From the IMG/VR virus record IMGVR_UViG_3300036766_000988, positions 1 through 64,000 of that record: a stretch of 64,000 nt of DNA; one strand, given 5' to 3'. The notes beneath the pieces were generated by a model. That model worked only from the letters and a program-made list of their open reading frames with translations, did no database searches and was not told the origin of the DNA. Below, in pieces: positions 36,104-56,222 of this stretch. Numbering within the stretch: position 1 is the first letter of the stretch; each line of letters starts with the position of its first letter. The position numbers were made by a program, and so were the translations under genes.

Positions 36104-36856
36104 TCAGAAGTCCTCATCAGCAAGAAGCCGCGTCCAGGCATCTCGGGGATCCTTGGGCTTCTCACAAGGTCTCCAACGCGTCGAGAAGGTCACAACATTC
36201 TCATGGAGAACTTTCTCGGTTCGCCAAACGGCCACTTGCACTCGAAGCATCGTGAGTTCTGTGATGCACGCAACGACTTGGCCCCCTTCCGCTTCAGGGT
36301 GCTGCACCCACTGACCGATCTGTAGCCAATCCGGGCGCACAAACGGGGGCACCTCGGAACCGTTCGCATCCGTGCCGGAGTCGTAGATCGGCAGCGCCCC
36401 CTCGGGAAGTTGCTCGACGAGGAACGTGCGACGACCGACCGACTGGTAGTCCATCCGCTGCCGTATAGGCGCGACCATCGCCTGAGCAAGCCGCTGACGG
36501 CCTTGCTGCGACTCTAGAGCCTGCCGGATGATCTGCTCTTGTGTGATCTGAGGAAGAACGTCACGATTGAGGTTCCCTAGATCAAGCAACCCATGGGGGT
36601 TCGTGAGCCGCTCAAACCCAAGGATAGGGCGCGTCGTGAGCGGCGTTTCAACACGACCATACTGGTCGTGGATCCTACGTAGAGCAGGTGAATCCGTCTC
36701 TAGGGACTCGTTCCGCCAATGAACAATGAGGCTCGGGACCGGCCTACGTAGGACGTCAATAGACGCAACGTCGCCAGATTCCGCGAACAGCGCCCGATGG
36801 CTGTTCATCAAGATCCGACCGTCGAGGTCGTTCGGATAGAAAAGTGTCCAGGGCAC
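36104..36856 (-). CDS. Hypothetical protein with a capsid-like segment and C-terminal AWTRLLADE tag
   Basis: GRQRLAQAMVAPIRQRMDYQSVGRRTFLVEQLPEGALPIYD segment. Confidence 0.65.
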   Translation of the reverse strand: MPWTLFYPNDLDGRILMNSHRALFAESGDVASIDVLRRPVPSLIVHWRNESLETDSPALRRIHDQYGRVETPLTTRPILGFERLTNPHGLLDLGNLNRDVLPQITQEQIIRQALESQQGRQRLAQAMVAPIRQRMDYQSVGRRTFLVEQLPEGALPIYDSGTDANGSEVPPFVRPDWLQIGQWVQHPEAEGGQVVACITELTMLRVQVAVWRTEKVLHENVVTFSTRWRPCEKPKDPRDAWTRLLADEDF

Positions 36857-36907
36857 GGGAAGGCCCGAGACTACACCATCAAAAAGAAGCTAAGAAATGT
36901 TACGCAG

Positions 36908-36981
36908 TGGAGTGTCGTACGGGGATCGAACCCGTGTACCCGGATTTAGAGTTCGGTGCCTGACCTCTAGGCTAACGACAC
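36908..36981 (-). tRNA. Amber-suppressor tRNA (anticodon CUA)
   Basis: Cloverleaf: acceptor GUGUCGU/ACGACAC, D-arm GCCU-AGAGGUC-AGGC, anticodon arm CCGAA-CUCUAAA-UCCGG (one A-C mismatch), T-arm ACGGG-UUCGAUC-CCCGU, U73-CCA. Confidence 0.9.
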
Positions 36982-36985
36982 GAGA

Positions 36986-37285
36986 TTACCGACCGATTGC
37001 CACAAGAGCTTCATCCACAGCCGTGTCGGCCAGGATAAAGCTCCGCATGGCCCGAACCCACCCAGCATTCCGAGCGAACTGAATGAACGCCGAAATTTCC
37101 TCGGGCCCCACGGTGGAACAACGCCGTTCGGCAAATTCCACCGTGAGGATGTGACCAGGGCTGGTCTCATCCTCGATGAGGACTCGAAGTCGAGGTCCGA
37201 TACTAGGCTTCAAAGCCCGAACCCTGAAGCGGTACGGAACTCCGTTGACCTTGATCTGTCGGGTGCCCCTTCGAGGCATCGTCAT
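36986..37285 (-). CDS. Hypothetical protein
   Basis: MPRRGTRQIKVNGVPYRFRV...GPEEISAFIQFARNAGW; ATGA overlap. Confidence 0.65.
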   Translation of the reverse strand: MTMPRRGTRQIKVNGVPYRFRVRALKPSIGPRLRVLIEDETSPGHILTVEFAERRCSTVGPEEISAFIQFARNAGWVRAMRSFILADTAVDEALVAIGR

Positions 37286-37680
37286 GCAGCTTCAGTACAC
37301 CGAAGAGCGAGCGGAAGACTACTGACAAGACGACGAGCTGCGGGTTCAAGAGCAAACGCCGTCAACTCGTTCCCCCGGTCGGGCTCATGGAACGGCGCCA
37401 CCGAGAAGCCCCGGTCGACTGCCCTGTTGAAGAGGCCCCAAAGAGCCTCCTCGTTGGGCACGGCAAGCATGGCGAGGTAGTTCGAGCGCGTGTACCACGC
37501 CTGATCGATTTCCGGGTGATGAGCCACGAACTCCCGCAAGGCGTGCGCCGTCTGGATGGCTTGCACCCCCGGAGGGAGATCTTCCCGCGTCACGAGGAAA
37601 AGTTTGTCGGTCGGGCCCACAACAAGACTCCGTGAACCCAGATGAGCACCCATGTTCTCCATGTCACGTCGTCCCCCCAT
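37282..37680 (-). CDS. Peptidyl-tRNA hydrolase, Pth2-like
   Basis: KLFLVTREDLPPGVQAIQTAHA...L.VPNEEAL...FHEPDRGNELTAFAL...LPLAL; start uncertain. Confidence 0.8.
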   Translation of the reverse strand: MGGRRDMENMGAHLGSRSLVVGPTDKLFLVTREDLPPGVQAIQTAHALREFVAHHPEIDQAWYTRSNYLAMLAVPNEEALWGLFNRAVDRGFSVAPFHEPDRGNELTAFALEPAARRLVSSLPLALRCTEAA

Positions 37681-38260
37681 CGGAGTCCTCGTCGTACTCG
37701 TTATCGTCTTCCGCCATAACCCTGCGTTCGTCGGCGCACTTGCGGAAGTGCATTGAAACCGCCCCGATGATGGTTTCGGGAAGACCCGCCGTCTTCAGGC
37801 TCTCCTTCCAACCCACCTCGGAACGATCCCCTGCGATCCAGTGCTTTTCCCCGATGATGAACTTGGGCGGATCACTGTAGACGTTCCCGCCAGGCGTCTC
37901 CAAGTAGGGCCACAACTCCAGCGGGCTGTCATTGCAACAACCGCAGTTATGCCGAAGATCGAAGCGGTCGACTTTCGTGTTCACGGACTTCGAATAGTAG
38001 GCCACCTTGTTCCAGCGGCCCGTAAACTGCCGAAGATCCGGGTACTCCTTGAGAAGGGACTCGATCTGGTCCGCTTGGGCAAGCGCCGCTGCGGCTTCCT
38101 TGCGAAGCTTCTCGATTGCGCGTGGAACGGCAAGTCTAGCATCCTCCTCGACCTTCTTTTGCCATTCCTCAGCGGCCTTGCGACGCGACGCTTCCGCAGC
38201 CGCTTGCTGCTCGGGGGTGGGCTCGGATGTCAGGGCCTTCAGAAGCTTCTTGCTGAGCAT
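37664..38260 (-). CDS. Hypothetical protein (HNCGCC motif)
   Basis: MLSKKLLK start coupled to the upstream stop. Confidence 0.65.
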   Translation of the reverse strand: MLSKKLLKALTSEPTPEQQAAAEASRRKAAEEWQKKVEEDARLAVPRAIEKLRKEAAAALAQADQIESLLKEYPDLRQFTGRWNKVAYYSKSVNTKVDRFDLRHNCGCCNDSPLELWPYLETPGGNVYSDPPKFIIGEKHWIAGDRSEVGWKESLKTAGLPETIIGAVSMHFRKCADERRVMAEDDNEYDEDSDGGTT

Positions 38261-39459
38261 CACGAGAGCACCTGCTTCGCATATGCGAAGGCCTCGGCCA
38301 TTGCAGCCGCCGAATGCTCGAACCACTTATCCTCGACGTGCTTGCCATCCCGATAGATGACGAGCTTGATCGGGCCGGTCTCACAGGCCCATTCGAGGTC
38401 AATGGTGCTCTTGGCCTTGTAGTGGATCCGGCGGCACCACCGCTTCTCCCGACCGGTGAAGTGCGGACACCAGTTGTCGTACGTGACCCCGAGGCCCGAA
38501 TGATCTTCGGGCGACAATGCAGGATCCTTCACCAGCTCGATGTACGCCAGGTAAAGCGGATCGGTGGCCTTGAAGTCCTCCTTCCACTGCTCGTACTTGC
38601 GATTGCCTTCCTCTCGGTCGGCCCGGACCTTCTTCTCCTGCTCGGAAACCCACTCCTCGACGAGCACGAGTTTCATACCCTCGCGGCGGAAGGTCTTGGT
38701 GGCGGCATCCACCCTCGGCTTCTGCTTACAGTGATCGGGGCAGTCGTCGTGATCGCACTCCGCCCGTTCCGTCTGGTAGCACTTGATCGTCCCATCGGGC
38801 TCGATGGTGGGGTACTTGCTGTCCTCTTCGACCCCTCCCTCAGCCTCGATCTCCGGCCAACCCTCCATGGGGTTGGAGAAGTCGAAGAAACGGAACTCGT
38901 ACGGGCAGGCCCAGTGGCAGCCACAGACCACCAACATCTGGGATCCCGCATCGAACGTGGAGTCTGCCCAGCAGAAGCCGAAACCTTCCTCCGCCTCTTC
39001 GGGCAGGAAATCCCGACGCTTGCCGGTATCCAGCTCGATGACCGTCTGCCCTTGATAGTCCTCGCCGCAGACGAGGTAATCATGACCGTTCGGATGCCCT
39101 TCGACGAACGTGTACGGGAACGCAGAGTAGTTCCTGTTCACGACCGCGATGGGCGCATCCGAGCCGAGCTTGAAGACCTTCCCCTGGATGTAAGACCAGC
39201 ATCCAGGCTTCGTCTCGTAGCTCGCGATGACAAGCTTGTACTGCCCGCTCGAACTCAGCTTCTCCCAACGATCTTTCGTGCTCTCGTTCGCGGGAACGAA
39301 AACAGCGTCCTTCTCGGCCCGATAGTACGCCTTGAGCAGACCCGGCTGAACGAGGGCCTTGAGACGCTTTCGCTCCTCGTAAGCACCCGGCTCGTGGCTA
39401 TCGAAGTCGAGGTAGGCCTGCAACTCGGGGGTCATCCCCTTGAAGGTCGTGTTCATCAC
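38260..39459 (-). CDS. Hypothetical protein (~400 aa)
   Basis: GTGA overlap with the upstream gene; GCHWACPY motif. Confidence 0.7.
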   Translation of the reverse strand: MMNTTFKGMTPELQAYLDFDSHEPGAYEERKRLKALVQPGLLKAYYRAEKDAVFVPANESTKDRWEKLSSSGQYKLVIASYETKPGCWSYIQGKVFKLGSDAPIAVVNRNYSAFPYTFVEGHPNGHDYLVCGEDYQGQTVIELDTGKRRDFLPEEAEEGFGFCWADSTFDAGSQMLVVCGCHWACPYEFRFFDFSNPMEGWPEIEAEGGVEEDSKYPTIEPDGTIKCYQTERAECDHDDCPDHCKQKPRVDAATKTFRREGMKLVLVEEWVSEQEKKVRADREEGNRKYEQWKEDFKATDPLYLAYIELVKDPALSPEDHSGLGVTYDNWCPHFTGREKRWCRRIHYKAKSTIDLEWACETGPIKLVIYRDGKHVEDKWFEHSAAAMAEAFAYAKQVLS

Positions 39460-39836
39460 GCGACCTCCGTACGGACGTAGGGCTTCTTCTCCCGCACCGG
39501 AGCCGCGATAGCCCCCTCGGGGTTGGCGAGCCACTGCTCGACCTCGGGGCTCGGCTTCGTCGCCCACGAACTCTTGGCCACCTCGGCGAAGCCAGGGATG
39601 TGCGTCCCGAGGATCGTCGTGATGTACCGTGCGTTGGGCGGGTTGTGGTTGACGACCGTGCCGTCCGGCATCACCTGCTGCCGGGTCTGGCGCTCGACGC
39701 GGCGGTACGGGAAACCCCGCACGAACGCCCACGCGAGGTTGCCCTCACGGCCTCCGGTGTTGGCACGGATGGCCCGGTGGATCGCCTTCACTTGCGCCTT
39801 CTCGTCGGCGCTCATCTGCTTGTAGTTCTCGAACAT
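39456..39836 (-). CDS. Hypothetical protein, first gene under the leader attenuator
   Basis: AAGGAG SD; LAWAFVRGFPYRRVE. Confidence 0.7.
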   Translation of the reverse strand: MFENYKQMSADEKAQVKAIHRAIRANTGGREGNLAWAFVRGFPYRRVERQTRQQVMPDGTVVNHNPPNARYITTILGTHIPGFAEVAKSSWATKPSPEVEQWLANPEGAIAAPVREKKPYVRTEVA

Positions 39837-39843
39837 GATCTAT

Positions 39844-39940
39844 CTCCTTGATTTGACTCTACTGTTTCGCGGTTGGCTGAAACAGGAGTCCAAGGAGGAC
39901 CACGTGCAAGAGCGAGGTGCAGCTAGAGGAAGTGTTTCAC
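39844..39940 (-). promoter_or_regulatory. Leader peptide MKHFL(UAG)LHLALARGPP with an SD-sequestering hairpin
   Basis: GTG AAA CAC TTC CTC TAG CTG CAC CTC GCT CTT GCA CGT GGT CCT CCT; hairpin CTCCTTG-GACTC-CTGTTTC / GAAACAG-GAGTC-CAAGGAG. Confidence 0.75.
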
Positions 39941-39947
39941 GGGGAGC

Positions 39948-39976
39948 AGCATGCGCTCTCAGATCCTGGTTGTCAA
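39948..39976 (-). promoter_or_regulatory. Sigma70 promoter
   Basis: TTGACA-N17-CATGCT; leader GTG starts 7 nt downstream (leaderless). Confidence 0.7.
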
Positions 39977-40033
39977 CGGGATCGTGACGTCAGGCTCACT
40001 TCTTCTGAAAACACCGTTGAAGTCGGAGGTGCG

Positions 40034-40360
40034 TCAGTAATTTCGGTGCCGAGACGCATCTCCCATGTCGCCGGGGAACCCCATTTTGCTCGTCGTCCGC
40101 ATCACGTCCTTGACCGCTTCGGGGATCTGTTCGCTGGTCTCGACGTAGCGGGTGTAGGGCCTTCCCATCAGGTGGCCTTCGTTGCCGTCGATCTTCACGA
40201 CCGCGACCATGTAGCCGCCCTTGCCGCCCGCTTGAGGCCTGACGACGACCGTGTACTCCCACGGACGCCCATCTGTCGTGGTGCTCTTCTCAGCCCGACC
40301 GAGTTCCTTCGGGGTGAGGCGGATGGCCTTGTCAGCACGACGATCGTACGAGTACGTCAT
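40034..40360 (-). CDS. Hypothetical protein (MTYSYDRRA N-terminus)
   Basis: ORF; TCTTGT motif upstream. Confidence 0.6.
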   Translation of the reverse strand: MTYSYDRRADKAIRLTPKELGRAEKSTTTDGRPWEYTVVVRPQAGGKGGYMVAVVKIDGNEGHLMGRPYTRYVETSEQIPEAVKDVMRTTSKMGFPGDMGDASRHRNY

Positions 40361-40382
40361 ACCCCACCCTGACACAAGAAGT

Positions 40383-40928
40383 TCAGCCGCTCAGGAACCG
40401 GGCGGTGACCCGAAGCGCTGTAGTATCCTCGGGACTGCACGCGATCTGCATCGGAGTTGTGCTGACGTGATGGATCTTGAACTCAACGCTCTTCGTCTTG
40501 AGAAACGTGTCGAAAGCCCCGACATGTTCAGCACGGTCTTCCCACATCTCAACCTGCTTTGTTGTCTCTGACAAGAGAGCAGCGATCGTCTTGAGCTTGA
40601 AAGGGAGCGTGTCATCCCCGTTAGAAAAATGGGTCTCATCGAACCGGAGGCCCACCTCAGCCAACAGAGCTTGGACCCGAGTCCGCAGCTTCGGAGGCCT
40701 GCCTGTAATCATGATCGCATAGACACTAGGATTGGAAATGGACTTGCGTGCCGCTGCCACCGTAGAAGCCACCCACCACTCAGCGTCAGGCTTTTCTGGC
40801 ACGCATGGAGGCGAGAGACTCTCAAGCCGACCCCACCAGCCCTGCGTCCACCACTCAGGTTTCGCAGGCGAGCGAAAAAGCGTCCCATCGAAGTCGAAGA
40901 CATGCAGGGTCTCGATAGTCACGGGCAT
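40383..40928 (-). CDS. HAD phosphatase, Swiss-Army-Knife RNA-repair type
   Basis: LHVFDFDGTLFRSP, MITGR, FK, MWEDR..H; C-terminal ALRVTARFL. Confidence 0.8.
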   Translation of the reverse strand: MPVTIETLHVFDFDGTLFRSPAKPEWWTQGWWGRLESLSPPCVPEKPDAEWWVASTVAAARKSISNPSVYAIMITGRPPKLRTRVQALLAEVGLRFDETHFSNGDDTLPFKLKTIAALLSETTKQVEMWEDRAEHVGAFDTFLKTKSVEFKIHHVSTTPMQIACSPEDTTALRVTARFLSG

Positions 40929-42181
40929 GCACCAGGGGGTCGAGGGTCAGCTTCACCTTTCCAGTAGGTCGTAACAAGAAGCATCGAATGGCCCTTCGGA
41001 CGCACGACGATCGAGAGGCCACTCGCCGAATCCACCCACTCAAAGCTTGTGCCCCGAGCCCAGCCTTCGGTCACCCGCTGGTACATTTGGTTCTTCTGCG
41101 ACTTCCAGTCGTTGAGCGCCTTCAAGAGAGAACGAATGCCCGCTCGAACAAGCGGAACCGTGATGCCTCGTAGATCCATCCGATACTGCGCGTGTGGAGT
41201 GATGAGGATGTTGTCGATCGACCCGATCCCATGTTCTCGATCAGGGCTGTAGATCTTCGCGGCATCTGGGTTCTGTACTTTCTCACCGTGCTCGACGTCC
41301 TCAACGAGGTCATCACGAACAGCCGGATTCCGTACTTCCTTCTCGATGCGCTCGACCACATGGCAAGGTCCGCCGGGATAGCCTAGGGGAGGATCAAGAT
41401 CCGCCTGACGGTCCAACGCCGAGGTCTTGGGTGCCACCCACGCACCCAATTCGATCGTCAGAGCCACCTGGACTTTCGATGCTGGGATGTCCCCCAGATA
41501 TGCAATTGATCCAATGCGCGCAAGGCTCTTGGTGGGATCGGTTTCGCGACTATCTTCATCGGCCGCGACCTTCGAACCATCAATGCCGCGTACTTCTAGA
41601 ACCACTGCCGTTCCGTGGTGAGCTTTCGCAGCATCCAGCGCAGCGAACTTCGCCATCGAGAGCTGGGTCGTCAAATACACAGCTTCGGCTCGGCCTACGC
41701 CAGCGCCAGACCCCACCCCATAAGCAGGAACTACGTTGGTGTGGCTGCGAGGTCGTAGTCCCTCGACCAAAATACGAGAAGCCGCCGTAGAACTCGTCCC
41801 ATGATAGAAAGTCAGATGCTCCCAGTTCACCGAAGGTGTGTGGGGTTCCCCCAATAGCTGAGAGACAGGAATCCACGGCCCGTCAAACTTGATGACGAAC
41901 TCGTGTAGCTCGGGGTACTCCCGCACCATCTCACGAAGCGCCTTGTGGAACCCTGCGTGATGTTCTGTGGCACCATCAACCATGAGATTGCGCCAGTCGT
42001 TCTCACGCGCAAGGCTGAGCGCCGCATCCCAAGCCCAACCACCACGGAGGTACCCCCCAAGCTCCCAAGAACCTGCATCGTCCCCGTGGAAAGAGCCGTG
42101 ATACTTCTTGCCCTTACGTGGCAACGAGGCGGCCTGCCTGGCGAGAAACCGGGCGACGACTCGAAGGGCCAGCGCGTTCAT
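40919..42181 (-). CDS. Multidomain protein with an ADP-ribosyltransferase/Tpt1-like domain and a C-terminal HA..RM..R.I (RelE/DUF4258-like) domain
   Basis: FYHGTS...ILVEGLRP...VYLT...VVLEV; TPHAQYRMDLRGIT; N-terminal LRVVARFL. Confidence 0.6.
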   Translation of the reverse strand: MNALALRVVARFLARQAASLPRKGKKYHGSFHGDDAGSWELGGYLRGGWAWDAALSLARENDWRNLMVDGATEHHAGFHKALREMVREYPELHEFVIKFDGPWIPVSQLLGEPHTPSVNWEHLTFYHGTSSTAASRILVEGLRPRSHTNVVPAYGVGSGAGVGRAEAVYLTTQLSMAKFAALDAAKAHHGTAVVLEVRGIDGSKVAADEDSRETDPTKSLARIGSIAYLGDIPASKVQVALTIELGAWVAPKTSALDRQADLDPPLGYPGGPCHVVERIEKEVRNPAVRDDLVEDVEHGEKVQNPDAAKIYSPDREHGIGSIDNILITPHAQYRMDLRGITVPLVRAGIRSLLKALNDWKSQKNQMYQRVTEGWARGTSFEWVDSASGLSIVVRPKGHSMLLVTTYWKGEADPRPPGACP

Positions 42182-42208
42182 CGCTAACCCATCGGCACAA
42201 GAGGTTAT

Positions 42209-42817
42209 TCAGCTCTTGGCCTTGCGAGCCTCATCCCGAGCCTTGCGAGCCCCTTCCGCTGTAGACCAGACCCGAAGCTTGATGGCTCCGAGCGAGCGCA
42301 TGATGAGAAAGAGGGTCGTCCAGAGCGACTGATCCCCGTAGATCTCGGCCGACCACTTGCACCGGTCGCTCTTCTCGGCATCGTAGTACCCGAAGACGAG
42401 ATTACGCGGGAACCCTTCGAAATAGACCGCATGGAGAGAATCCCCCGTGTAGTCAGGATCGACAGGGGGCGTCGTGTAGAAGAGACCGGAAAAGTCGGCG
42501 TCGATGGGCTTTTCGCTGATGACCGAAAGCTTCCAGTCGTGGAAGTTGTTGCGGAGGATGAGCCGAAGCCCGAGATCCGGACGCGACAGCTCGTACACGG
42601 GGAGGAGAATCGACTTCGAGACATGCGTCGAGATGACGTTGGGGATCGCGTGGGTGTCGTCATAGTCGAGCCCCGCCCCAACGAGACCGACGAGGTCATC
42701 CCGCACGAAGCTGACCTGATGCCCCCAAGCGCTCTTCCAGAGCATCTCGTCGCCAACGGCCTGTTGACTGATCCACGCTTGCAGTTTGTTGGGGGAATCG
42801 CTGGAATTGAGGGTCAT
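42209..42817 (-). CDS. Hypothetical protein
   Basis: VISTHVSKSILLPVY...RNNFHDWKLSV; start revised. Confidence 0.65.
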   Translation of the reverse strand: MTLNSSDSPNKLQAWISQQAVGDEMLWKSAWGHQVSFVRDDLVGLVGAGLDYDDTHAIPNVISTHVSKSILLPVYELSRPDLGLRLILRNNFHDWKLSVISEKPIDADFSGLFYTTPPVDPDYTGDSLHAVYFEGFPRNLVFGYYDAEKSDRCKWSAEIYGDQSLWTTLFLIMRSLGAIKLRVWSTAEGARKARDEARKAKS

Positions 42818-43044
42818 GGTTCGCTCGTCTGATGTGGATTTGGGGCGGCTACCCGGTGGTAATGAGTCAAAGCTTGGCGCACCGTTTCGGCCGTCTCGGC
42901 ATCTGGGCAAACGGCGACCGTACGACACTCTGCATCGAACACTTCACACCAACCGGTGGGGAGTTGTACTGCGGGGTTGTCGGCTGCATAGGATCGCTCG
43001 ATGGGCAGCGTGCTCAAGTCCAACTCAAGATCTTCAATCCTCAT
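42814..43044 (-). CDS. Hypothetical protein
   Basis: MRIEDLELD; AAGGA SD; ATGA overlap. Confidence 0.5.
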   Translation of the reverse strand: MRIEDLELDLSTLPIERSYAADNPAVQLPTGWCEVFDAECRTVAVCPDAETAETVRQALTHYHRVAAPNPHQTSEP

Positions 43045-43058
43045 GTTGTCCTTGCTGC

Positions 43059-43337: not shown

Positions 43338-43579
43338 GAATTGCTCGACTTGTGTCCCTCGACGGCGGCCAAGATAGCCTGAGCCGCTGGGCTTCCTTCA
43401 GCGGCACGCTTGACGACCTCATCACGCGTGATGGCCCCGCCGATCGTGAGCTGCCGTCTGTACTTCTCCCACGAATGCGGAAGGCCCGGATGCTCGAAAG
43501 CGTGCTGGCAACGCAACCGCGTGCTGTCCCAAAGCGTGAAGTCCGAAATGACTCCGCACTTGCCGTCCGTATCACTCAT
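43334..43579 (-). CDS. Hypothetical protein
   Basis: MSDTDGKCG...RCQHAFEHPGLPHSW. Confidence 0.5.
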   Translation of the reverse strand: MSDTDGKCGVISDFTLWDSTRLRCQHAFEHPGLPHSWEKYRRQLTIGGAITRDEVVKRAAEGSPAAQAILAAVEGHKSSNS

Positions 43580-43586
43580 TGGGATC

Positions 43587-44930: not shown

Positions 44931-45253
44931 CTAGGCTTCGCCGACGACCTGTTTTTTCCCGAAGATGCCGTCCCAGTTGTTGCGAAACGCCTGCGAGTTC
45001 ACCTTGGCCGGACCTTTGGTGCTCCCGGACACTCCCCCGACTTCCTCGACTTTGAAGCGCTGTGTCCCAGCGATCTGTTCGATGTGAAAGGCTCCCGCCG
45101 GGATGGGCTGGCCTTCTTTCATGGGCGTCATCACCCCGACGGCGATCTGGTGATCGGCTGTGTGTCGAACAAACGGACGCGAGCCATCCCCAAGATCAGG
45201 CCCCGCTTGAAGCTCATCCCCGCAGGGCAGGGCGCTTTTTTGTCGTCGTCCAT
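44931..45253 (-). CDS. Hypothetical protein with an apparent frameshift in an A6 run
   Basis: ATG 45253 lies 8 nt after GGTGTAA; MDDDKK followed by the -1 frame reads continuously into MTPMKEGQP...NWDGIFGKK. Confidence 0.5.
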
Positions 45254-45262
45254 GCCCTACTT

Positions 45263-45279
45263 TACACCGCTTCGGTGTA
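45263..45279. promoter_or_regulatory. Back-to-back GGTGTA promoters forming a palindrome
   Basis: TACACCG-CTT-CGGTGTA between divergent starts 45253 and 45290. Confidence 0.6.
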
Positions 45280-45289
45280 CTCTAACAGC

Positions 45290-45733
45290 GTGCCGCACTG
45301 GATCCTTCGAGACCACATACCCGTCGAGGTCGAAGACCCTCTCGTCTGGGCCCAGTTCTTTGAAGACATGGAAAACCGACGTGTTGCCGAAACCCTCATC
45401 GGTTCCGCACGCATCTCGACCGTCTTCTTGGGACTTGACCACAACTTTGGGGGAGAGGGCCCGCCCCTCCTCTTCGAAAGCATGATCTTTGAGGGACCCG
45501 AAGACCTCAACGAGCGAGAGGTGCGGTACGCCACGTGGGACGAGGCTACCGCAGGTCACCAAGAGCTTGTTCAGATTGTCTCGGAACGCCTGGGCATCAT
45601 CTCAAAACCGTCCAAGAGCCTCGTTGCCCGCATCGCCAAAAAGGTCGTCTTCGCGGAGAACCATCGGGTACCGAAGCCTTCTCTGACCGCCTGGGATCGT
45701 ATCACACGCGATGACGATGACGATGATCTCTAG
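45290..45733 (+). CDS. Phage hypothetical protein with C-terminal TAWDRI..DD tag
   Basis: ISTVFLGLDHNF...LLFESMIF...RYATWDEA.AGH; GTG start. Confidence 0.7.
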   Translation: MPHWILRDHIPVEVEDPLVWAQFFEDMENRRVAETLIGSARISTVFLGLDHNFGGEGPPLLFESMIFEGPEDLNEREVRYATWDEATAGHQELVQIVSERLGIISKPSKSLVARIAKKVVFAENHRVPKPSLTAWDRITRDDDDDDL

Positions 45734-46454: not shown

Positions 46455-47960
46455 ATGCCCGAAGGACAACCGCTCGTCAGCGAGATCTGGGAAATGGTGG
46501 ACGGTACCGGACGATCTGTCCGAGGGATCGTTGCTGATATGACCCCGACCGTCGCCACCTTGGTCTCTTTCACGGGAAACCGCTTCCGCATCAGTCCTTC
46601 GAGGATGCTCACGACGTGGCGCTTTGCTCAAGCCCCTCCTCCGACCGCTCTGCGGTGCAATCGACGTGGATGCAACCAACCAGGGATGCTCCGTTTCCAG
46701 CGAGGACTATCCCCCGAGTGGGTCTGCCCCAGGCACCTGCCCGTGGGGGTTCAAGCTTCGCTCACGACCGAGAGCTTAGGCCTTCCTCAAACCCCTCAAG
46801 CTCAACAGGTCCAAGTCCCCCTATGCCCGAGATGTCACGTCGCGGGTCTGATGATTGAGGACGCGCGGGTATCGACCCTTCAAGTGCAGTTCTGGCAGTG
46901 CCCTCAGTGCAACGCACGTTGGGGATCGCTATCGATCCCTCCCACCTTGGTGGAAAACGTAGCCTCCTACGTTCGGGCAGCCATCGATGACTTCATGACC
47001 CAGACCCGTACGCACCAAGTGCGGATCGACCAGATCGAAACCCGCTCCTACATCCTCCCGCAGCTCTTCGGAGATACGCACCTTGCGGAAGCTGCGCCCT
47101 CAACGCCCCCTCAGCTACACCTCTACCGTGGATTGCATGTCGTACAGAACGACAACCTTGGAGAGGGGGTTGCGATGATCTTCCGCACCAGCGGCGCCCC
47201 CGTCGTACGGGACACCAGTCGGGATCATGTCATGGCCCTGCCCACCAACGAAGAGATGTTGATGGGGTCGCCTGCACGACGCACCGTCGCCGAAGCTGTT
47301 GCCGAAGCCCTTCGAGCGGATCGCGAAGAGAACCGAGCTGAACTCTTGGCTCGCCCTGTTTCCCAGAACGTGATCGACAGCTACCGATCCAGCGAGTCTG
47401 AGTACGTCGGCATTTTTCCGGTACGGCAAACCCTACCGGTTCTCCCAGCCGATCCTCAACCCTTCATACCTGTGCAGCAAATGGGGACAATAGAGGAAGA
47501 AGCTTGGATTCAGGAACAAGCCCCGACCCCTTTCGCGGCCGTGGGCCAACGATGGATCCAACGCAAAACCGGCGACCTCATCGAGATCACACGCGTTGGG
47601 CCCACGGACGACCGAAGCACCACCGTAGTACACTTCAAGCGGGTATCGGATGGAGTCGAGTCGTCAAACGCCATGTTGCTCGACGACTTCATGCGCGAAT
47701 GCCACCCCTACACAACAAGATCAAGTCAACCCCAGGACATCCCTGTTGTTGTGGTGCTCAAAGACGAAGAGTGGGAGCACGTGGATTCAGGAGAAGTCGT
47801 GCGGATTGATACGGTGGACTCCAAACGTGATCTCATCATCGTCATGCAGAAAGAGGGTAAACGTCGAAGCGTGCCCCTCTTCGAGTTTGCCAACGCTCGA
47901 TGGCGCAAGATCATCCGACGCACTGCTTACGACCGCCTCCTCGACTTGGAGGACGACTGA
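46455..47960 (+). CDS. Modular hypothetical protein (Zn ribbons, SH3-like modules, tag RTAYDRLLDLEDD)
   Basis: CPRC...CPQC; VGQRW and DEEW modules. Confidence 0.7.
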   Translation: MPEGQPLVSEIWEMVDGTGRSVRGIVADMTPTVATLVSFTGNRFRISPSRMLTTWRFAQAPPPTALRCNRRGCNQPGMLRFQRGLSPEWVCPRHLPVGVQASLTTESLGLPQTPQAQQVQVPLCPRCHVAGLMIEDARVSTLQVQFWQCPQCNARWGSLSIPPTLVENVASYVRAAIDDFMTQTRTHQVRIDQIETRSYILPQLFGDTHLAEAAPSTPPQLHLYRGLHVVQNDNLGEGVAMIFRTSGAPVVRDTSRDHVMALPTNEEMLMGSPARRTVAEAVAEALRADREENRAELLARPVSQNVIDSYRSSESEYVGIFPVRQTLPVLPADPQPFIPVQQMGTIEEEAWIQEQAPTPFAAVGQRWIQRKTGDLIEITRVGPTDDRSTTVVHFKRVSDGVESSNAMLLDDFMRECHPYTTRSSQPQDIPVVVVLKDEEWEHVDSGEVVRIDTVDSKRDLIIVMQKEGKRRSVPLFEFANARWRKIIRRTAYDRLLDLEDD

Positions 47961-49453
47961 TGCCCCCGCCTGGAATCCCTGATTGGGTCTTCCCCGGGGC
48001 TGTCGTACAACAGAACGGCCGCAGGCCCCGTTACGCCATCGGCACGATGGACCTACATAGCGATCTCCGACACTGTGAGATCTTCCTGCAACGAATCATC
48101 GAAGGAGATCCTCCGAGTCTCGCGAACGGAGAAGACTTCGAGACCATGTACCTCGGAGATCTGCTGGGCGGCTGGCATCACACGGGTGAGTATCTTTACC
48201 CTCGTATGTCCCAACCAATTAACGTCACAGGTCTGGGTGCGTTCCCAATTGGGTCTACTGTTGACATAACAAATTCCCGAGGAGAGCACGAATACTTCTC
48301 AGTCACGGGTCACGCAGAGAACACGAGCCAGATTATCCATCTCGACCAACAGATAGCCACTCAAGCCCCTCCGCTTGTAGGGGAGTGGTATCGTTGGGAA
48401 TCCGGAGACGTCCCGATCACTCTCTTTTTCGTCGAAGGAATTGCGAACGGCCAAGTTGAAGTATCCCTTGGGATGACCGACACGCTGGAACACATTCCCG
48501 TCGAGGACTTCATCCGAGCCTTAGCCAACGGACCTCGCGATGAGCCCCGTGGAGAGGCTTCCGCCCAACATCTCAACTACGAATGGGTGTTCTCCGAACC
48601 TTATCTAGATGACACGGACGAATCCGGCTTCCTTCCAGGGAGCGTTATGTTGGACACTGAGGGTCGAGAGTTCTTCCTTCTTGCCCGCAACCGCAACAAT
48701 ACATGGGTTTGCCGTGCTGCTCATGACATGAGCACATGCCCCGAGAACTACCTCGCTAGAGCGCATTTTCTCGCAAGTCAGTTCAGGGCGCAGTTCCACA
48801 TGGAAGCTGTCGAAGTGATGAGCGGAACCCCAGAAGGAATAGGGATGTCGTTCGCGGAGCGCGTTCTCCAACTGAACCAACCCATGGGCAGTGCATATCT
48901 CGCCGGGGAGCCGATCCATGAAGACGACCCCGATTACTTCAGACCCGTAAACGGAGATATCTCAGGCAATCCCGAACCCCCAATGCGTTTCCGTATCGGT
49001 GATCGATGGCATTTCGACGCCCCCAACGAAGGTATCTGGACGCTTGAAACGGTGGAGGATAGGTATCACGAGGGAGAGCACACGATCACCAATAGATTCC
49101 GAGGGGACGATGGGGCTGTCATGTCGGGCCCCCAGGACTGGGTCATCCGCAACGGTCGACGGATCACGCCACCGGATCCTAGGTTCACGGGCGATCCAGT
49201 CGAACCCAACCAAGTATGGGAGATCCCTACAAACACCACACGGCAGCCCACTTCTCGATGGAAAGTCACAAGTCTCGCTACCCGTTCCACTGGAGACGAA
49301 ATGGTGAACCTGACCCCCGAGAACGGAAAAGGAGCCCCCATCTGCTGGCCGGTGATCCGACTCCGGGCCCAAGGCCGATGTGTTTTTGACGGCCGCATCC
49401 GTCGAACATCCTTCGAGCGTCTCATCTCCGACGAGGGCGATGATGTCGGGTGA
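47960..49453 (+). CDS. Modular hypothetical protein (repeated G..W modules, tag RTSFERLISDE)
   Basis: TGATG-coupled start MPPPGIPDW. Confidence 0.7.
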   Translation: MPPPGIPDWVFPGAVVQQNGRRPRYAIGTMDLHSDLRHCEIFLQRIIEGDPPSLANGEDFETMYLGDLLGGWHHTGEYLYPRMSQPINVTGLGAFPIGSTVDITNSRGEHEYFSVTGHAENTSQIIHLDQQIATQAPPLVGEWYRWESGDVPITLFFVEGIANGQVEVSLGMTDTLEHIPVEDFIRALANGPRDEPRGEASAQHLNYEWVFSEPYLDDTDESGFLPGSVMLDTEGREFFLLARNRNNTWVCRAAHDMSTCPENYLARAHFLASQFRAQFHMEAVEVMSGTPEGIGMSFAERVLQLNQPMGSAYLAGEPIHEDDPDYFRPVNGDISGNPEPPMRFRIGDRWHFDAPNEGIWTLETVEDRYHEGEHTITNRFRGDDGAVMSGPQDWVIRNGRRITPPDPRFTGDPVEPNQVWEIPTNTTRQPTSRWKVTSLATRSTGDEMVNLTPENGKGAPICWPVIRLRAQGRCVFDGRIRRTSFERLISDEGDDVG

Positions 49454-49922
49454 ACCAGAGCGATACAGTCGCTACCCCGAGGTCGGGCTGTTCTACGCCA
49501 TGCGTGAGCCCCTGTGCCTCGCACAGATCACGGCGGTTAGCACCACGGGCCTTGGTAACGGACCGACCAGCGTCCTTCTCAATGCCTGGACGCCCACATC
49601 CGATAAAGAGGAGCTGTCCTTCATCGACCTACGGGCCGACATGGCAGACTACCTTTGGCACAGCGAGGAAATCGAACTCGGCTCAGGTCATTACGCCGGG
49701 TGGAAAATCGATGCTGTTGCGGGCGACGTGTACTTGGCCACCATGATCAACCGTCTCTGGTTCGCAGGACCCAAAACGACTTCCAAGATGCTTCACGTGA
49801 TCGCCAACTTTCATGTATCCGAAAGCGATCTCCTAATGGCAGTCCTCTACCAACAAGGTGCTGGACACCGCAGGCCTCGGTGTAAGACCGCCTTCGAGCA
49901 CATCTTGGAGGATGCCACGTGA
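49440..49922 (+). CDS. Hypothetical protein (tag KTAFEHILED)
   Basis: GAGGG SD; overlaps the upstream stop. Confidence 0.6.
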   Translation: MMSGEPERYSRYPEVGLFYAMREPLCLAQITAVSTTGLGNGPTSVLLNAWTPTSDKEELSFIDLRADMADYLWHSEEIELGSGHYAGWKIDAVAGDVYLATMINRLWFAGPKTTSKMLHVIANFHVSESDLLMAVLYQQGAGHRRPRCKTAFEHILEDAT

Positions 49923-53447: not shown

Positions 53448-54224
53448 TCAGATCTTAATGTCCTTCCGACGCTCCTCTTCGGCTTCGATACCCTTGAGAG
53501 CACGAGCCCAGTCGTCCACGTGCATGAGCCGCATCGACCCAAACATGGGATAGCCGTTGATCCCTCGCGGCAAGGCTGCGTTCCAGTACTCCCAGATGCA
53601 CCCGATTTGGCTGAGCGACTCCTTGTTGTACTGGGAGAGCCCTCCCAACGCGAGGGGCAGAAAGACCAACCCGACCACCTGCGCACCTCCGTTCGGGTTG
53701 ATGTGCTTGTCTGTGAAAATCGAGTTGCCGAGAAAATCGAAGACGAACTTCTTGAGATCCTCGTCAGCCATCCGAGGCAAGTCGAGCGCCGGAGCGAAGC
53801 CATCCCAGTCCCCAGGAAGCTCGTCGTCGATGCCGAGAAGCCCGAGGTGCTTGAAAAGGCCGTGGTTGTACTCCCGGAACGTGCAGTTGGGTTCGAGGAC
53901 CCTCTTGAAAGGAACCCATCCGACCCACGTGTTGGGCTCACACGCTGAGGGCTCGCCCTTGAAAGAGTCGATCCTGTAGACCCAAGCAACCTTGTTGTCC
54001 ACGGGGTCTACGCGCTCGTAGACCTTGACGGCCTCCTCGACTTCGACACCGCCCTCTTCCCGTGTTTCGCGTCTTACCGCGACAGCCGGATCCTCGCCAG
54101 GTTCGATCTTTCCCCCAGGAAGCCCAAGATCTTCGAGGTTGCCCTTACGAGAGATCGCCAGGACTTCCTTGCCGTTCTTCCCCTCACGAAGGAAGAGCGC
54201 AACAACGCTGCTCGGGGACTCCAT
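53448..54224 (-). CDS. Nudix hydrolase fused to an unknown C-terminal domain
   Basis: Nudix box GGKIEPGEDPAVAVRRETREEGG. Confidence 0.88.
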   Translation of the reverse strand: MESPSSVVALFLREGKNGKEVLAISRKGNLEDLGLPGGKIEPGEDPAVAVRRETREEGGVEVEEAVKVYERVDPVDNKVAWVYRIDSFKGEPSACEPNTWVGWVPFKRVLEPNCTFREYNHGLFKHLGLLGIDDELPGDWDGFAPALDLPRMADEDLKKFVFDFLGNSIFTDKHINPNGGAQVVGLVFLPLALGGLSQYNKESLSQIGCIWEYWNAALPRGINGYPMFGSMRLMHVDDWARALKGIEAEEERRKDIKI

Positions 54225-54397: not shown

Positions 54398-54467
54398 GGA
54401 AAGCGGAAGGGACGACCCTCAAGCGGTCCCTTACAGGCGGCCAAGAGCACGTCCCCTCCAGTCCCCT

Positions 54468-54710
54468 CTACACCGAAATGTCGTCGGACAAGAGACGTTC
54501 CCAGAACGTGGGCAGTTCTCGTTCCGTCGCATTCAGTTGCGCGACAAGCGGGTGTGAATGAGGCGCGTCTTGCCGCAGAACACTCCACCGCACCCCGCAG
54601 TCAGCACAAAAGATCGTGATGGGCTGCCACGGACGCTTACCTTCGTGACACCCGAGCGTATGCCCCTTCTTCCGAACGTGGTCCCGAGCTTTCTCGATAG
54701 ACGTCTTCAT
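54468..54710 (-). CDS. Small Zn-ribbon protein (tag PTFWERLLSDD)
   Basis: CADCG; ATGA overlap. Confidence 0.6.
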   Translation of the reverse strand: MKTSIEKARDHVRKKGHTLGCHEGKRPWQPITIFCADCGVRWSVLRQDAPHSHPLVAQLNATERELPTFWERLLSDDISV

Positions 54711-54991
54711 AGGAACCCCTCATCGAGGATCTTAGCCCAGGCAGAGCCGTCACGCGGAGGAATGTGTCGAAAGGCTTTTTCGAGCACAACACGAGCTTCT
54801 TCTGAGGTCAGGAGCACCCGCAGGGCCCCTGATTGGACAAGGGTGATCCTTGAAATACGCACCTGGAACGAACACGAACGGCAAAACAGCAAGACCCCGA
54901 GCCCGCGACGTACATCCGGAGTCACCAAGATATCTCGGTGGATGGTCGTTTCCACGTGCTTCCGCATGCGGGCAATAGCCGAATTGCTCAT
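54707..54991 (-). CDS. Small protein (tag SAWAKILDE)
   Basis: CRSC; ATGA overlap. Confidence 0.55.
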   Translation of the reverse strand: MSNSAIARMRKHVETTIHRDILVTPDVRRGLGVLLFCRSCSFQVRISRITLVQSGALRVLLTSEEARVVLEKAFRHIPPRDGSAWAKILDEGFL

Positions 54992-55269
54992 CTGCGTTGT
55001 TTGCGCTTGTGAGGACGGATCTTGACCCGCCCGTCTTGTTTGCTGATCCAGGCAACTGTCTTCGCGAACTCCGCATGCCCGAGAAGAGCCTCGACCGTGT
55101 AGTACGTCGCTTTCAATTCACGGTTCGTGAAGAACGCGTGAATCGACTTGTGGCAGTCTCGGCAAAGGGTCTTGGTAACCTTTCCCCCCAGACTCTTCGG
55201 CACGAGATGATGGTCAGTCGGGTGATAATTGGGCCGCAGACAGAGCGGGCACCTATCAGGTGTCGTCAT
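54988..55269 (-). CDS. HNH endonuclease
   Basis: CPLC...DHHLVPKSLGG...LCRDCHKSIH. Confidence 0.85.
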   Translation of the reverse strand: MTTPDRCPLCLRPNYHPTDHHLVPKSLGGKVTKTLCRDCHKSIHAFFTNRELKATYYTVEALLGHAEFAKTVAWISKQDGRVKIRPHKRKQRR

Positions 55270-55570
55270 CAAGGAAGTCATCTTGGAGCCTCATCCAAGC
55301 AGTCGGTCGCTCTGTCGTGATGCCGGGTATTTTGAGCATCGCCTTGAGAAGTTGCTGTGGACCATCCTGCATCTTGTAGAAAGGCGCCAGCTCAGGTTCA
55401 GCCATGATCTCACCGTGCGTGATGCTCCACTCCTTGGCGCACTTGCGACAGCGAAAGCACCAGGTCATCGGATAGGGGTGAATCCGTACCTGGGCATCGA
55501 ACTCCCGGTGCTGGGGCGTCCGCGTGATATGCTCGAAGATCTCCCCGATTGTTTGACGAGCTTTACTCAT
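55256..55570 (-). CDS. Small protein (tag PTAWMRLQDD)
   Basis: MSKARQ start; CRKC. Confidence 0.6.
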   Translation of the reverse strand: MSKARQTIGEIFEHITRTPQHREFDAQVRIHPYPMTWCFRCRKCAKEWSITHGEIMAEPELAPFYKMQDGPQQLLKAMLKIPGITTERPTAWMRLQDDFLDDDT

Positions 55571-56222
55571 CGTCTCCAAGGAGTTCCCCAACTTTCTCCC
55601 ACGCGATGGGACGATCCCGTCCTGCCGTGAGCTTCGCAGACTCAATCTCAGCTCCCCATCCGAACCTGTCCGTGAGGTCTGGGCGCCCCCCGGCAGCGAT
55701 CTCATCCTCTGAGAAGACCCAAGAACGCCGACATCTTGTAAGATCGGCGTAACACGAGATCGTCCACGCAGTGAGGAACGTGCGTCGGTCAAGGCCCTCA
55801 GCGAGCGAGCCCCCTTGCTCAATTGTGAAGCTCCGATGCTTGTCCAACGCGACGTGATCTCGAAGGTCTTTGAGTTTGCGGGTGAATCCATTCGCAAGAC
55901 CTGCAAACGCTTCGGGATTCACGCTCTCGATGTGAACCCGCACCTCGGGTTCAAGATCGAAGAGGAAGCTCACGAAGTTCGGCTCTTGAGGTCCCCCTAG
56001 GGTGCCTTCCAAGAGGACTTGGCCCATGGCCACCGTGGAGTCGTAGAACACGTTGACACCCCACGCCATCCCGGCCGGGCCATACCCGAGGGTCATACGG
56101 TCGAAAATATCGAGCCTTGGCGCGATTGGTGCAAATTCGGCCTCAGCGACCCGGATGCTGGTGACCCGACCATCCTCCCGCTGGATGAAGTCGAAGGCGG
56201 TCGAGAGCTGCTCAGGGGTCAC
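55563..56222 (-). CDS. Hypothetical protein with capsid-like segments (tag IAWEKVGELLGDDE)
   Basis: LSTAFDFIQREDGRVTSI...AWG; YADL...WGAEI. Confidence 0.6.
   Translation of the reverse strand: MTPEQLSTAFDFIQREDGRVTSIRVAEAEFAPIAPRLDIFDRMTLGYGPAGMAWGVNVFYDSTVAMGQVLLEGTLGGPQEPNFVSFLFDLEPEVRVHIESVNPEAFAGLANGFTRKLKDLRDHVALDKHRSFTIEQGGSLAEGLDRRTFLTAWTISCYADLTRCRRSWVFSEDEIAAGGRPDLTDRFGWGAEIESAKLTAGRDRPIAWEKVGELLGDDE

What the first reader, a model, noticed from the sequence alone, without database searches (positions are those of the whole stretch)
36380..56222. Three tagged accessory proteins appear to carry different fragments of a major capsid protein (decoys?)
From my recollection of HK97-fold capsid proteins of related large phages (not a search result): 36380-36538 (QALESQQGRQRLAQAMVAPIRQRMDYQSVGRRTFLVEQLPEGALPIYD) resembles the N-terminal arm; 55563-56222 (LSTAFDFIQREDGRVTSI...AWG; YADL...WGAEI) resembles two degenerate copies of the central region; 47400-47456 (EYVGIFPVRQTLPVLPADP) resembles the C-terminal region. 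All three proteins end in the TAWxRLL-like tag. Known: capsid proteins trigger defences such as CapRel and Lit. Inference: capsid-mimic baits that titrate capsid-sensing immunity or deliver it to the hub, or modulators of capsid assembly.
Basis: inference. Interest (0 to 1): 0.75.

Follow-up and report, generated by a model that had tools for sequence, protein, structure and literature searches.

The report
Capsid-protein fragments inside tagged phage proteins
A huge sediment phage, like its relatives, encodes several modular accessory proteins that each carry a different conserved piece of the phage's own HK97-type major capsid protein, and many also end in a shared C-terminal tag; this pattern was not found described, and it probably links these proteins to capsid assembly or packaging rather than being proven immune decoys.

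Summary
The core observation holds. The window is the first 64 kb of a 252-kb contig, about half of a huge phage related to Bacillus phage G. I built a profile from the roughly 295-aa HK97-fold capsid protein (MCP) of this clade.

- **A** (36104-36856, minus strand): E 9e-25.
- **C** (55563-56222, minus strand): E 1e-3.
- **B** (46455-47960, plus strand): E 6e-3.

Reversed and shuffled controls never scored better than E 0.69. Profile-profile comparison gave 99.8% for A, 93.5% for C and 47% for B.

- A carries the N-arm helices and the first E-loop strand.
- C carries one A-domain core. The claimed second copy is not supported.
- B carries the long P-domain strand.

Three more piece-bearing proteins lie elsewhere on the contig. 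Related huge phages, including the cultured Tunturi 5, have their own sets beside one intact MCP. The tag sits on 15 ORFs, most without MCP pieces.

Function is not shown. My best reading (about 0.4) is self-mimicry that docks these proteins onto the capsid assembly network, with the tag acting as a capsid-targeting peptide. The decoy idea stays possible (about 0.2) but has no direct support.

The parts
36104..36856 (-). Protein A, 250 aa, GTG start. Order of modules: ferredoxin-like N-domain, flexible linker, MCP N-arm piece, small beta-barrel, tag.
   Evidence: ORF and translation. 25 homologs of 160-390 aa, most with the same architecture. AF2 model: pLDDT 77, pTM 0.36, so the domains are independent.
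36356..36559 (-). MCP-derived piece of A (residues 100-167): the three N-arm helices plus the first E-loop strand. It is the most conserved part of the A family.
   Evidence: phrog_2522 E 8.5e-11. MCP HMM E 8.8e-25. hhalign 99.8%, E 1e-27, matching MCP 8-74. Invariant columns lie in this stretch. Mapped onto the MCP model.
36152..36331 (-). Small beta-barrel of A (residues 176-235), of KOW/Tudor/SH3 type.
   Evidence: AF2 pLDDT about 90. Foldseek gives only generic small-barrel matches, E 0.02 or worse.
36107..36142 (-). C-terminal tag of A (DAWTRLLADEDF).
   Evidence: Predicted as a short helix at residues 240-245. Kept in homologs.
46455..47960 (+). Protein B, 501 aa. Order of modules: N-terminal barrel-like region, very conserved zinc-binding (CCCH-like) motif and a zinc ribbon, variable linker holding the MCP piece, two barrel-like C-terminal regions, tag.
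   Evidence: Only weak zinc-ribbon Pfam matches.
47352..47453 (+). MCP-derived piece of B (residues ~300-333): the last A-domain strand and the long P-domain strand.
   Evidence: MCP HMM E 0.0062, rank 4 of 4951. hhalign E 2e-4, prob 47%, matching MCP 234-266. Motif present in 8 of 14 homologs. Beats all controls.
47922..47957 (+). C-terminal tag of B (TAYDRLLDLEDD).
   Evidence: Conserved in 13 of 14 family members.
55563..56222 (-). Protein C, 219 aa: N-terminal MCP A-domain core, an unrelated C-terminal half, and a looser tag.
56001..56222 (-). MCP-derived piece of C (residues 1-74): A-domain core (helix, strand, helix, hairpin).
   Evidence: MCP HMM E 0.0013, rank 3. hhalign 93.5%, E 2.3e-7, matching MCP 166-244. 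Mapped onto the MCP model.
55566..55607 (-). Tag of C (IAWEKVGELLGDDE). The ortholog has TSWGRIL followed by an acidic end.
45062..45733 (+). Tagged ORF without a detectable MCP piece (tail TAWDRIT plus an acidic run).
   Evidence: No Pfam match.
47900..49453 (+). Tagged ORF, 517 aa (tail TSFERLIS plus acidic residues). Its start is uncertain. It is the neighbour of B, and its ortholog is adjacent to the B ortholog in L131.
49380..49922 (+). Tagged ORF (tail TAFEHILED).
54468..54710 (-). Tagged ORF, 80 aa (tail TFWERLLSDD).
   Evidence: Ortholog in L131.
54707..54991 (-). Tagged ORF, 94 aa (tail SAWAKILDE).
   Evidence: Ortholog in L131.
57538..57834 (-). Tagged ORF, 98 aa (tail TAWERLLGDD).

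Best explanation
A, B and C belong to a wider set of modular accessory proteins of phage-G-like huge phages. Each carries a conserved copy of one interaction element of the phage's own HK97-fold capsid protein:
- the N-arm helices plus the first E-loop strand;
- the E-loop hairpin plus a P-domain strand;
- the long P-domain strand;
- the A-domain core.

The most likely mechanism is inferred, not shown. These self-mimicking pieces would bind what the matching MCP element normally binds. That means neighbouring MCP subunits (by arm or strand exchange) and the C-terminal tails of scaffold-type proteins that dock on the N-arm. The proteins would then be recruited into procapsids, or would modulate their assembly.

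The shared C-terminal tag is a separate sorting peptide: a Pro-rich linker, a short amphipathic helix around an invariant aromatic-x-Arg, and an acidic end. It is carried by 15 proteins. It plausibly targets them to the capsid interior, like the C-terminal tails of scaffolding proteins, prohead proteases and encapsulin cargo.
For: Shown:
- The homology of the pieces is statistically solid.
- They map to defined sub-structures of a confident HK97-fold MCP model: pLDDT 89, top Foldseek hit HK97 gp5 at E 1e-11.
- In the A family the piece is the most conserved region and keeps the residues that are near-invariant in true MCPs. It sits between disordered linkers and does not pack on A's own domains (pTM 0.36). 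This is what a trans-binding arm would look like.
- The pattern recurs. Three more piece proteins lie on the same contig: 222337-222798 (E 1e-7), 180115-180570 and 250694-250963 (hhalign E 2e-5 and 3e-5).
- Complete relatives have one intact MCP plus pieces fused to other modules.
- The pieces are no closer to the cognate MCP than to other MCPs, so they are old and maintained.
- The tag is positionally enriched and is kept in orthologs on a syntenic contig, where 9 of 21 genes carry it.

Suggestive for capsid targeting:
- The only tag-like C-terminus on an annotated gene of phage Tunturi 5 is on its head maturation protease, which ends in ASFDRLLRK.
- Scaffold-like proteins of about 60 related loci end in a conserved L-W-[DE]-R-P or LSxLW motif.
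- The clade's protease proteins end in a W-K-G-R-I-A-S motif.
- In phage 80alpha, the C-terminal helix-and-hook of the scaffold docks on the MCP N-arm helix and is mimicked by SaPI1 CpmB (PMC5644958).
Against: - No binding, localisation or expression data exist.
- The genes lie in an accessory region, not in the head module. Their neighbours are a Ro60-like protein, a ligase, a NUDIX protein and a PARP-like protein.
- Their complement differs between phages whose MCPs are 76-95% identical. That looks more like arms-race genes than structural genes.
- In G001 the tag variant (SRFERIL) does not resemble that phage's own scaffold tail (SSLWNSAPDV). The tag-to-tail similarity is therefore short, found post hoc and possibly chance.
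- A-domain and P-strand pieces are intramolecular core elements of the fold. It is not obvious how they would dock on a folded MCP.
- Tunturi 5 gp172 has a Tat-like signal or membrane anchor in front of its piece, which would place the piece outside the cytoplasm.
Confidence: 0.4

Rival explanations
1. Immune decoys or baits. The MCP-like pieces mimic the parts of the very conserved MCP that host capsid-sensing defences recognise. They would titrate those sensors, or use the tag to deliver them to a common hub that sequesters or destroys them.
For: - The genes sit among accessory, counter-defence-like genes: a Ro60-like RNA-binding protein, a nucleotidyltransferase, a ligase, a NUDIX protein and a PARP-like protein.
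- Tunturi 5 gp219 lies next to NAD-salvage genes.
- Different phages carry different sets and arrays of pieces, including tandem small paralogs in G002, as expected under an arms race.
- The MCP is unusually conserved (70-95%), which makes it a good target for sensors.
- Many different N-terminal modules share one tag, as adaptors to a single hub would.
- That capsid proteins trigger CapRel and Lit is established knowledge.
Against: - No sensor, hub or interaction has been identified.
- There are no matches to known defence or anti-defence families.
- For the known capsid sensors, binding of the capsid element activates the toxin. A plain decoy would therefore trigger the system rather than block it.
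- Short strand pieces are unlikely to reproduce a folded epitope.
- Timing of expression is unknown, since no RNA runs exist.
Confidence: 0.2
2. MCP-derived 'Velcro' for a non-capsid complex. Under this idea the pieces bind one another, for example E-loop/N-arm pieces with P-domain pieces as in MCP-MCP contacts. Tags would bind the small beta-barrels. Together they would build a multivalent network or factory that is independent of the capsid shell.
For: - Complementary elements are spread over different proteins. G001 has a circularly permuted mini P-domain protein (301 aa) with the same N-domain as A.
- Several of the proteins combine one to several small barrels with one tag preceded by a Pro-rich linker.
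Against: - The sets are incomplete and redundant in every genome examined: no spine-helix piece reaches significance, and E/F and B/D are duplicates.
- The barrels could not be linked by sequence.
- No interaction evidence exists.
Confidence: 0.12
3. No dedicated function. The pieces would be remnants of illegitimate recombination with the MCP gene (or, for B, a chance resemblance) that happen to sit in linkers of unrelated proteins.
For: - In B the piece lies in the most variable region and is absent from 6 of 14 homologs.
- B's statistics are modest: E 0.006 and hhalign prob 47%.
Against: - The A piece is the best conserved part of a family whose members are only 30-57% identical overall.
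- The C and D pieces are conserved or highly similar.
- Independent piece proteins recur in at least six related genomes.
- Controls never reach these scores.
Confidence: 0.06

Closest known systems
SaPI1 CpmB and phage 80alpha scaffolding protein (shared C-terminal helix-and-hook that docks on the MCP N-arm; PMC5644958)
   Same: A short C-terminal amphipathic helix is reused by a second protein to reach the same site on an HK97-fold capsid protein. It is mimicry within the capsid assembly network, and the N-arm helix is the docking platform.
   Different: In that case the scaffold's tail is copied, not the capsid protein. Here sub-domains of the MCP itself are copied into several proteins, and the tag's partner is unknown.
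Capsid-targeting peptides: the HK97 prohead protease C-terminal tail, the T4 capsid targeting sequence of internal proteins and Alt, and encapsulin cargo-loading peptides (own knowledge; T4 core components in PMC9958956 and PMC3012670)
   Same: One short terminal peptide, after a flexible linker, is shared by many otherwise unrelated proteins. The MCP family here is close to encapsulin shells. A tag-like tail ends the Tunturi 5 protease.
   Different: The sequence motif differs from all of these, and encapsidation has not been shown. The T4 signal is N-terminal and is cleaved.
MCP paralogs such as the T4 gp24 vertex protein
   Same: Extra genes derived from the major capsid protein that act in the capsid.
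   Different: gp24 is a full-length HK97 fold. A, B and C hold only 30-75-residue pieces embedded in other domains.
Capsid-derived triggers of abortive infection: the Gol peptide of T4 gp23 with Lit, and MCP sensing by CapRel (own knowledge)
   Same: Short or partial regions of a major capsid protein are biologically recognised on their own.
   Different: Those are parts of the intact MCP sensed by the host. No phage-encoded stand-alone MCP fragment acting as a decoy turned up in five literature searches.
Decoration proteins that add a strand to the E-loop/N-arm sheet (lambda gpD type; own knowledge)
   Same: Accessory proteins that bind an HK97 lattice by beta-augmentation with an extended arm.
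   Different: Those arms are not homologous to the MCP, and the genes lie in the head module.

Membership tests
HK97-fold major capsid protein (Pfam PF05065 / PHROG phrog_2522) | Sequence homology to the family | tested here: met
   A piece E 8.5e-11 to phrog_2522. hhalign 99.8% for A, 93.5% for C and 47% for B.
HK97-fold major capsid protein (Pfam PF05065 / PHROG phrog_2522) | Complete fold: N-arm, E-loop, P-domain, spine helix and A-domain in one chain | tested here: not met
   Each protein matches only one stretch of the 295-aa MCP: 8-74, 166-244 or 234-266. No other part aligns. The model of A has no HK97 body. They are not capsid proteins.
C-terminal capsid-targeting / scaffold-type docking peptides | Short peptide at the extreme C-terminus after a flexible linker, shared by unrelated proteins | tested here: met
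   15 ORFs carry it. The 7-residue pattern is enriched 10-fold at C-termini, p 5e-7. Pro-rich linkers precede it, and a helix is predicted at A residues 240-245.
C-terminal capsid-targeting / scaffold-type docking peptides | Resemblance to the tails of the phage's own scaffold or protease | tested here: inconclusive
   The Tunturi 5 protease ends in ASFDRLLRK. Scaffold tails carry L-W-[DE]-R-P and protease tails W-K-G-R-I-A-S. However, the G001 tag and the G001 scaffold tail differ.
C-terminal capsid-targeting / scaffold-type docking peptides | Binding to the shell interior and encapsidation of the tagged protein | not testable with these tools
   This needs proteomics, reporter fusions or complex prediction.
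Phage anti-defence decoy / sponge | Direct binding and neutralisation of a host immune sensor | not testable with these tools
   The host is unknown (sediment metagenome) and no sensor has been identified.
Phage anti-defence decoy / sponge | Early expression, before the mimicked trigger appears | not tested
   No RNA run holds this phage.
Full-length MCP paralog (T4 gp24 type) | Second full-length HK97-fold gene | tested here: not met
   Complete relatives show one full MCP and only partial extra matches.

The most novel reading that the evidence does not exclude
Phage-G-like huge phages may run a modular 'address-and-tag' system. Sub-domain mimics of their own, highly conserved capsid protein would serve as baits, either for host capsid-sensing immunity proteins or for unassembled MCP. 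A shared C-terminal tag, possibly read by the small beta-barrels or by the capsid interior, would route whatever is bound to a common hub. That would be a viral adaptor network built from self-capsid fragments, with no described counterpart.
Probability: 0.2. Interest if true: 0.9.

Novelty: new variant of a known kind. Interest (0 to 1): 0.72.

Why it matters
Capsid assembly and protein packaging in phages with genomes of 250-500 kb are almost unstudied. So is how such phages cope with immunity that senses capsid proteins.

A conserved set of proteins built from pieces of the phage's own capsid protein, plus a tag on about 5% of the called genes, gives concrete and testable handles:
- a candidate capsid-targeting signal, useful for loading cargo into very large capsids;
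- candidate assembly modulators or counter-defence baits.

One cultured relative, Tunturi 5 on Tunturiibacter, carries such pieces, so experiments are feasible.

Tried and rejected
- **Second MCP-like copy in C:** rejected.
- **Own MCP on the contig:** absent. The contig is about 53% complete.
- **Recent copying or concerted evolution with the cognate MCP:** rejected. The pieces are equidistant from all MCPs.
- **A 'split MCP' rebuilt from pieces that tile the whole fold:** rejected. The sets are redundant and incomplete in G000 and in the complete genome G001.
- **Tag identical to the scaffold tail:** only a W-[DE]-R core is shared, and it is not matched within G001.
- **Linking the small barrels by sequence:** the HMM found only A itself.
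- **Searches with no informative result for A, B, C or the other tagged proteins:** Pfam, PHROG, PADLOC, the ESM Atlas, and Foldseek against PDB and BFVD gave nothing beyond the MCP piece and generic KOW/Tudor/SH3-like barrels.
- **Relatives of C in IMG/VR:** none found.
- **Nucleotide relatives in GenBank phages:** none.
- **RNA evidence:** only sediment DNA runs hold the window.
- **My recollection that T4 core proteins share segments with gp23:** I could not confirm it in the two reviews I read, so I do not use it.
- **One hhalign call through the tool failed** and was repeated locally.


Full report
**Setting**

The window is the first 64 kb of a single 252,183-bp IMG/VR virus contig. GC is about 59%, no terminal repeats were found, and CheckV rates it 53% complete. 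No GenBank phage matches it at the nucleotide level. The only sequencing runs that hold it are sediment metagenome DNA.

The capsid protein family discussed below places it with other huge phages:
- uncultured phages of 250-490 kb;
- more distantly, Tunturiibacter phage Tunturi 5 (309 kb; MCP 48% identical);
- Bacillus phage G (498 kb; MCP 40% identical).

**The three proteins**

| Protein | Coordinates | Strand | Length | C-terminal end |
|---|---|---|---|---|
| A | 36104-36856 | minus | 250 aa | DAWTRLLADEDF |
| B | 46455-47960 | plus | 501 aa | TAYDRLLDLEDD |
| C | 55563-56222 | minus | 219 aa | IAWEKVGELLGDDE |

All three have metagenomic homologs that keep both the architecture and the tail:
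- A has 25 homologs, some on contigs of 280-407 kb.
- B has 20.
- C has one, which lies on the same 12.5-kb contig as a B homolog.

**Is the capsid resemblance real?**

A hits PHROG phrog_2522 'major head protein' (E 8.5e-11) with residues 105-164 only. One of A's database hits, P0024 (295 aa), is a true capsid protein. It matches phrog_2522 at E 9e-54 and carries Pfam Phage_capsid.

Complete relatives reached through the A segment each hold exactly one full-length MCP of this type. These are G001 (407 kb), G002 (436 kb) and G003 (377 kb). Their MCPs are 70-95% identical to each other and to P0024. The MCP of the present phage is probably of the same kind and lies on the missing half of the genome.

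I built an HMM from 100 such MCPs and searched all 4951 stop-to-stop frames of the contig with filters off. The four best hits were:

| Rank | Protein | E-value | HMM positions matched |
|---|---|---|---|
| 1 | A | 8.8e-25 | 24-88 |
| 2 | D (222337-222798, plus strand; new, untagged) | 9.9e-8 | 246-285 |
| 3 | C | 0.0013 | 178-252 |
| 4 | B | 0.0062 | 245-274 |

Reversed sequences and five shuffles of the same database never did better than E 0.69.

Profile-profile comparison, family against family, gave:
- A: 99.8%, E 1e-27, A residues 101-167 against MCP 8-74;
- C: 93.5%, E 2.3e-7, C residues 1-74 against MCP 166-244;
- B: 47%, E 2e-4, B residues ~300-330 against MCP 234-266.

The B motif is present in 8 of 14 family members and sits in B's most variable region. 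hhalign gave 0.6%, covering only a nine-residue stretch around WGAEI, and BLASTP found no internal repeat.

**What the pieces are**

An AlphaFold model of P0024 is confident (pLDDT 89, pTM 0.85). Its best structural matches are HK97 gp5 (E 1e-11), followed by other phage capsids and encapsulins. On that model:
- the A piece is the three N-arm helices plus the first E-loop strand;
- the C piece is the A-domain core;
- the B and D pieces are the last A-domain strand plus the long P-domain strand.

Two further ORFs of the contig carry the E-loop hairpin plus the following P-domain strand: 180115-180570 and 250694-250963, both on the plus strand (hhalign 77% and 73%, E 2e-5 and 3e-5).

The model of A looks like beads on a string (pTM 0.36):
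- a confident ferredoxin-like N-domain (residues 1-70);
- a disordered linker;
- the helical MCP piece, whose E-loop part is disordered;
- a confident small beta-barrel of KOW/Tudor/SH3 type (residues 176-235);
- a short tag helix.

Fold searches on this model give only generic barrel matches.

In the A family the MCP piece is the best conserved region. It keeps the positions that are nearly invariant in real MCPs.

**The pattern recurs in relatives**

- G001 has an A ortholog, a B-like 514-aa protein and an 84-aa ORF with a spine-helix piece. The B-like protein combines several barrels, a P-strand piece, a zinc ribbon and a tag.
- G001 also has a 301-aa protein with A's N-domain followed by MCP positions 262-300 and then 104-138. 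That amounts to a circularly permuted mini P-domain.
- G002 has tandem small ORFs. Each combines an N-arm or P-strand piece with a CxxC...CxxC ribbon and ends in V-M/I-E-S.
- G003 has a 214-aa protein with a long A-domain piece (E 1e-17).
- Two further partial contigs (G006, G009) also have pieces.
- Tunturi 5 has gp172 (P-strand piece behind a Tat-like signal or anchor) and gp219 (A-domain piece). Phage G showed none.

The pieces are not more similar to the MCP of their own phage than to other MCPs. They are therefore old and maintained, not fresh copies.

**The tag**

Fifteen ORFs of the contig end in the motif [TS]-[AFC]-[WFY]-[EDS]-[RKH]-[LI]-[LIM], usually followed by acidic residues and often preceded by prolines. 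Nine of them lie at 36-58 kb in the window. A strict seven-residue pattern for the motif is ten times more frequent at C-termini than inside frames (p 5e-7).

Orthologs on a syntenic 12.5-kb contig keep the tag, where 9 of 21 genes carry it. G001 uses the variant [ST]-R-F-[ED]-R-[IV]-L. None of the tagged proteins has a Pfam or PADLOC match.

The tag and the pieces are only partly linked:
- D and the two E-loop proteins have no tag.
- Twelve tagged ORFs show no MCP piece.

**How it may work**

Nothing here measures function, so this section is inference.

The A piece shows strict, MCP-like conservation in an exposed, flexible position. That argues it binds, in trans, what the MCP N-arm binds. 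In phage 80alpha the N-arm helix is the docking site for the C-terminal helix-and-hook of the scaffolding protein, and SaPI1 CpmB copies that tail to reach the same site (PMC5644958).

Several tails in the present clade have a similar character:
- Scaffold-like proteins two genes upstream of the MCP end in a conserved L-W-[DE]-R-P or LSxLW motif.
- Protease proteins end in W-K-G-R-I-A-S.
- The only tag-like C-terminus on an annotated gene of Tunturi 5 belongs to its head maturation protease, ASFDRLLRK, close to the B-family tag consensus.

I therefore favour, at about 0.4, that the pieces and the tag both connect these proteins to the capsid assembly network, either as packaged cargo or as assembly modulators.

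Several points count against this:
- The genes sit in an accessory region.
- Gene content turns over between phages.
- The G001 tag does not match the G001 scaffold tail.
- Tunturi 5 gp172 carries a signal-like N-terminus.

The decoy idea (about 0.2) explains the genomic context and the turnover well. It lacks any identified sensor or hub, and a simple decoy of a trigger should activate the sensor rather than block it.

Two further readings remain:
- a capsid-independent network held together by the pieces and tags (0.12);
- neutral remnants (0.06), which could apply to B alone.

**Novelty**

Five literature searches found no description of phage proteins built from sub-domain fragments of the phage's own capsid protein, and none of this tag.

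The nearest known cases are tail mimicry by CpmB, terminal capsid-targeting peptides and full-length MCP paralogs. I therefore file this as a new variant of a known kind. There is a real chance that it is something further removed.

Noticed in passing
window 29000-45000 and 53448-54224: An accessory island with RNA/DNA-repair and nucleotide-signalling flavour. It holds a nucleotidyltransferase (30344-31438, phrog_388), a Ro60/TROVE-vWA RNA-binding protein (33759-35561), a HAD-like ORF (40383-40928), a weak PARP-like ORF (40919-42181), an ATP-dependent DNA ligase (43587-44873) and a NUDIX hydrolase (53448-54224). The tagged genes are interspersed among them.
   Followed up: partly
window 46455-47960, residues 60-160 of B: The N-terminal half of B holds an almost invariant zinc-binding (CCCH-like) motif followed by the invariant stretch H-L-P-V-G-V, then x-A-x-L-T-T-E-S-x-G, and a second CxxC...CxxC ribbon. 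This region is far more conserved than the MCP piece and is probably B's main functional site.
   Followed up: no
L092 and L090 (G002, a 436-kb complete huge phage): Tandem small paralogs each combine an MCP N-arm or P-strand piece with a zinc ribbon and an identical C-terminal ending, V-M/I-E-S. This looks like a different 'tag' solution to the same theme.
   Followed up: partly
L129:2931-3224 (Tunturi 5 gp172): A 97-aa protein with a twin-arginine-like N-terminus (TRRQFF plus a hydrophobic stretch), followed by the most conserved MCP strand-helix motif. A capsid piece that may be exported or membrane-anchored is unexplained.
   Followed up: no
L006-L082, ORF two genes upstream of the MCP: Scaffold-like, Gln-rich proteins of about 60 related phages end in one of two conserved tails: K-K-L-G-x-V...L-E-x-L-W-[DE]-R-P, or L-S-x-L-W-x-S-A-P-D-V...F. 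Protease-domain proteins end in F-L-x-W-K-G-R-I-A-S. These are candidate shell-docking motifs.
   Followed up: partly
(control genomes): PHROG phrog_2522 also matches Thermotoga maritima, which I take to be its encapsulin, and encapsulins rank high in the fold search. This huge-phage MCP family therefore appears close to encapsulin shells.
   Followed up: no
window 3869-19953, minus strand: A run of very large ORFs (1898, 838, 756, 599, 670 and 396 aa) has no PHROG match at all. They may be virion or tail proteins of this divergent clade.
   Followed up: no
G000 180573-180875 and 181048-181350, minus strand (L118): Two tandem 100-aa paralogs with near-identical starts sit next to the E-loop-piece ORF at 180115-180570.
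   Followed up: no
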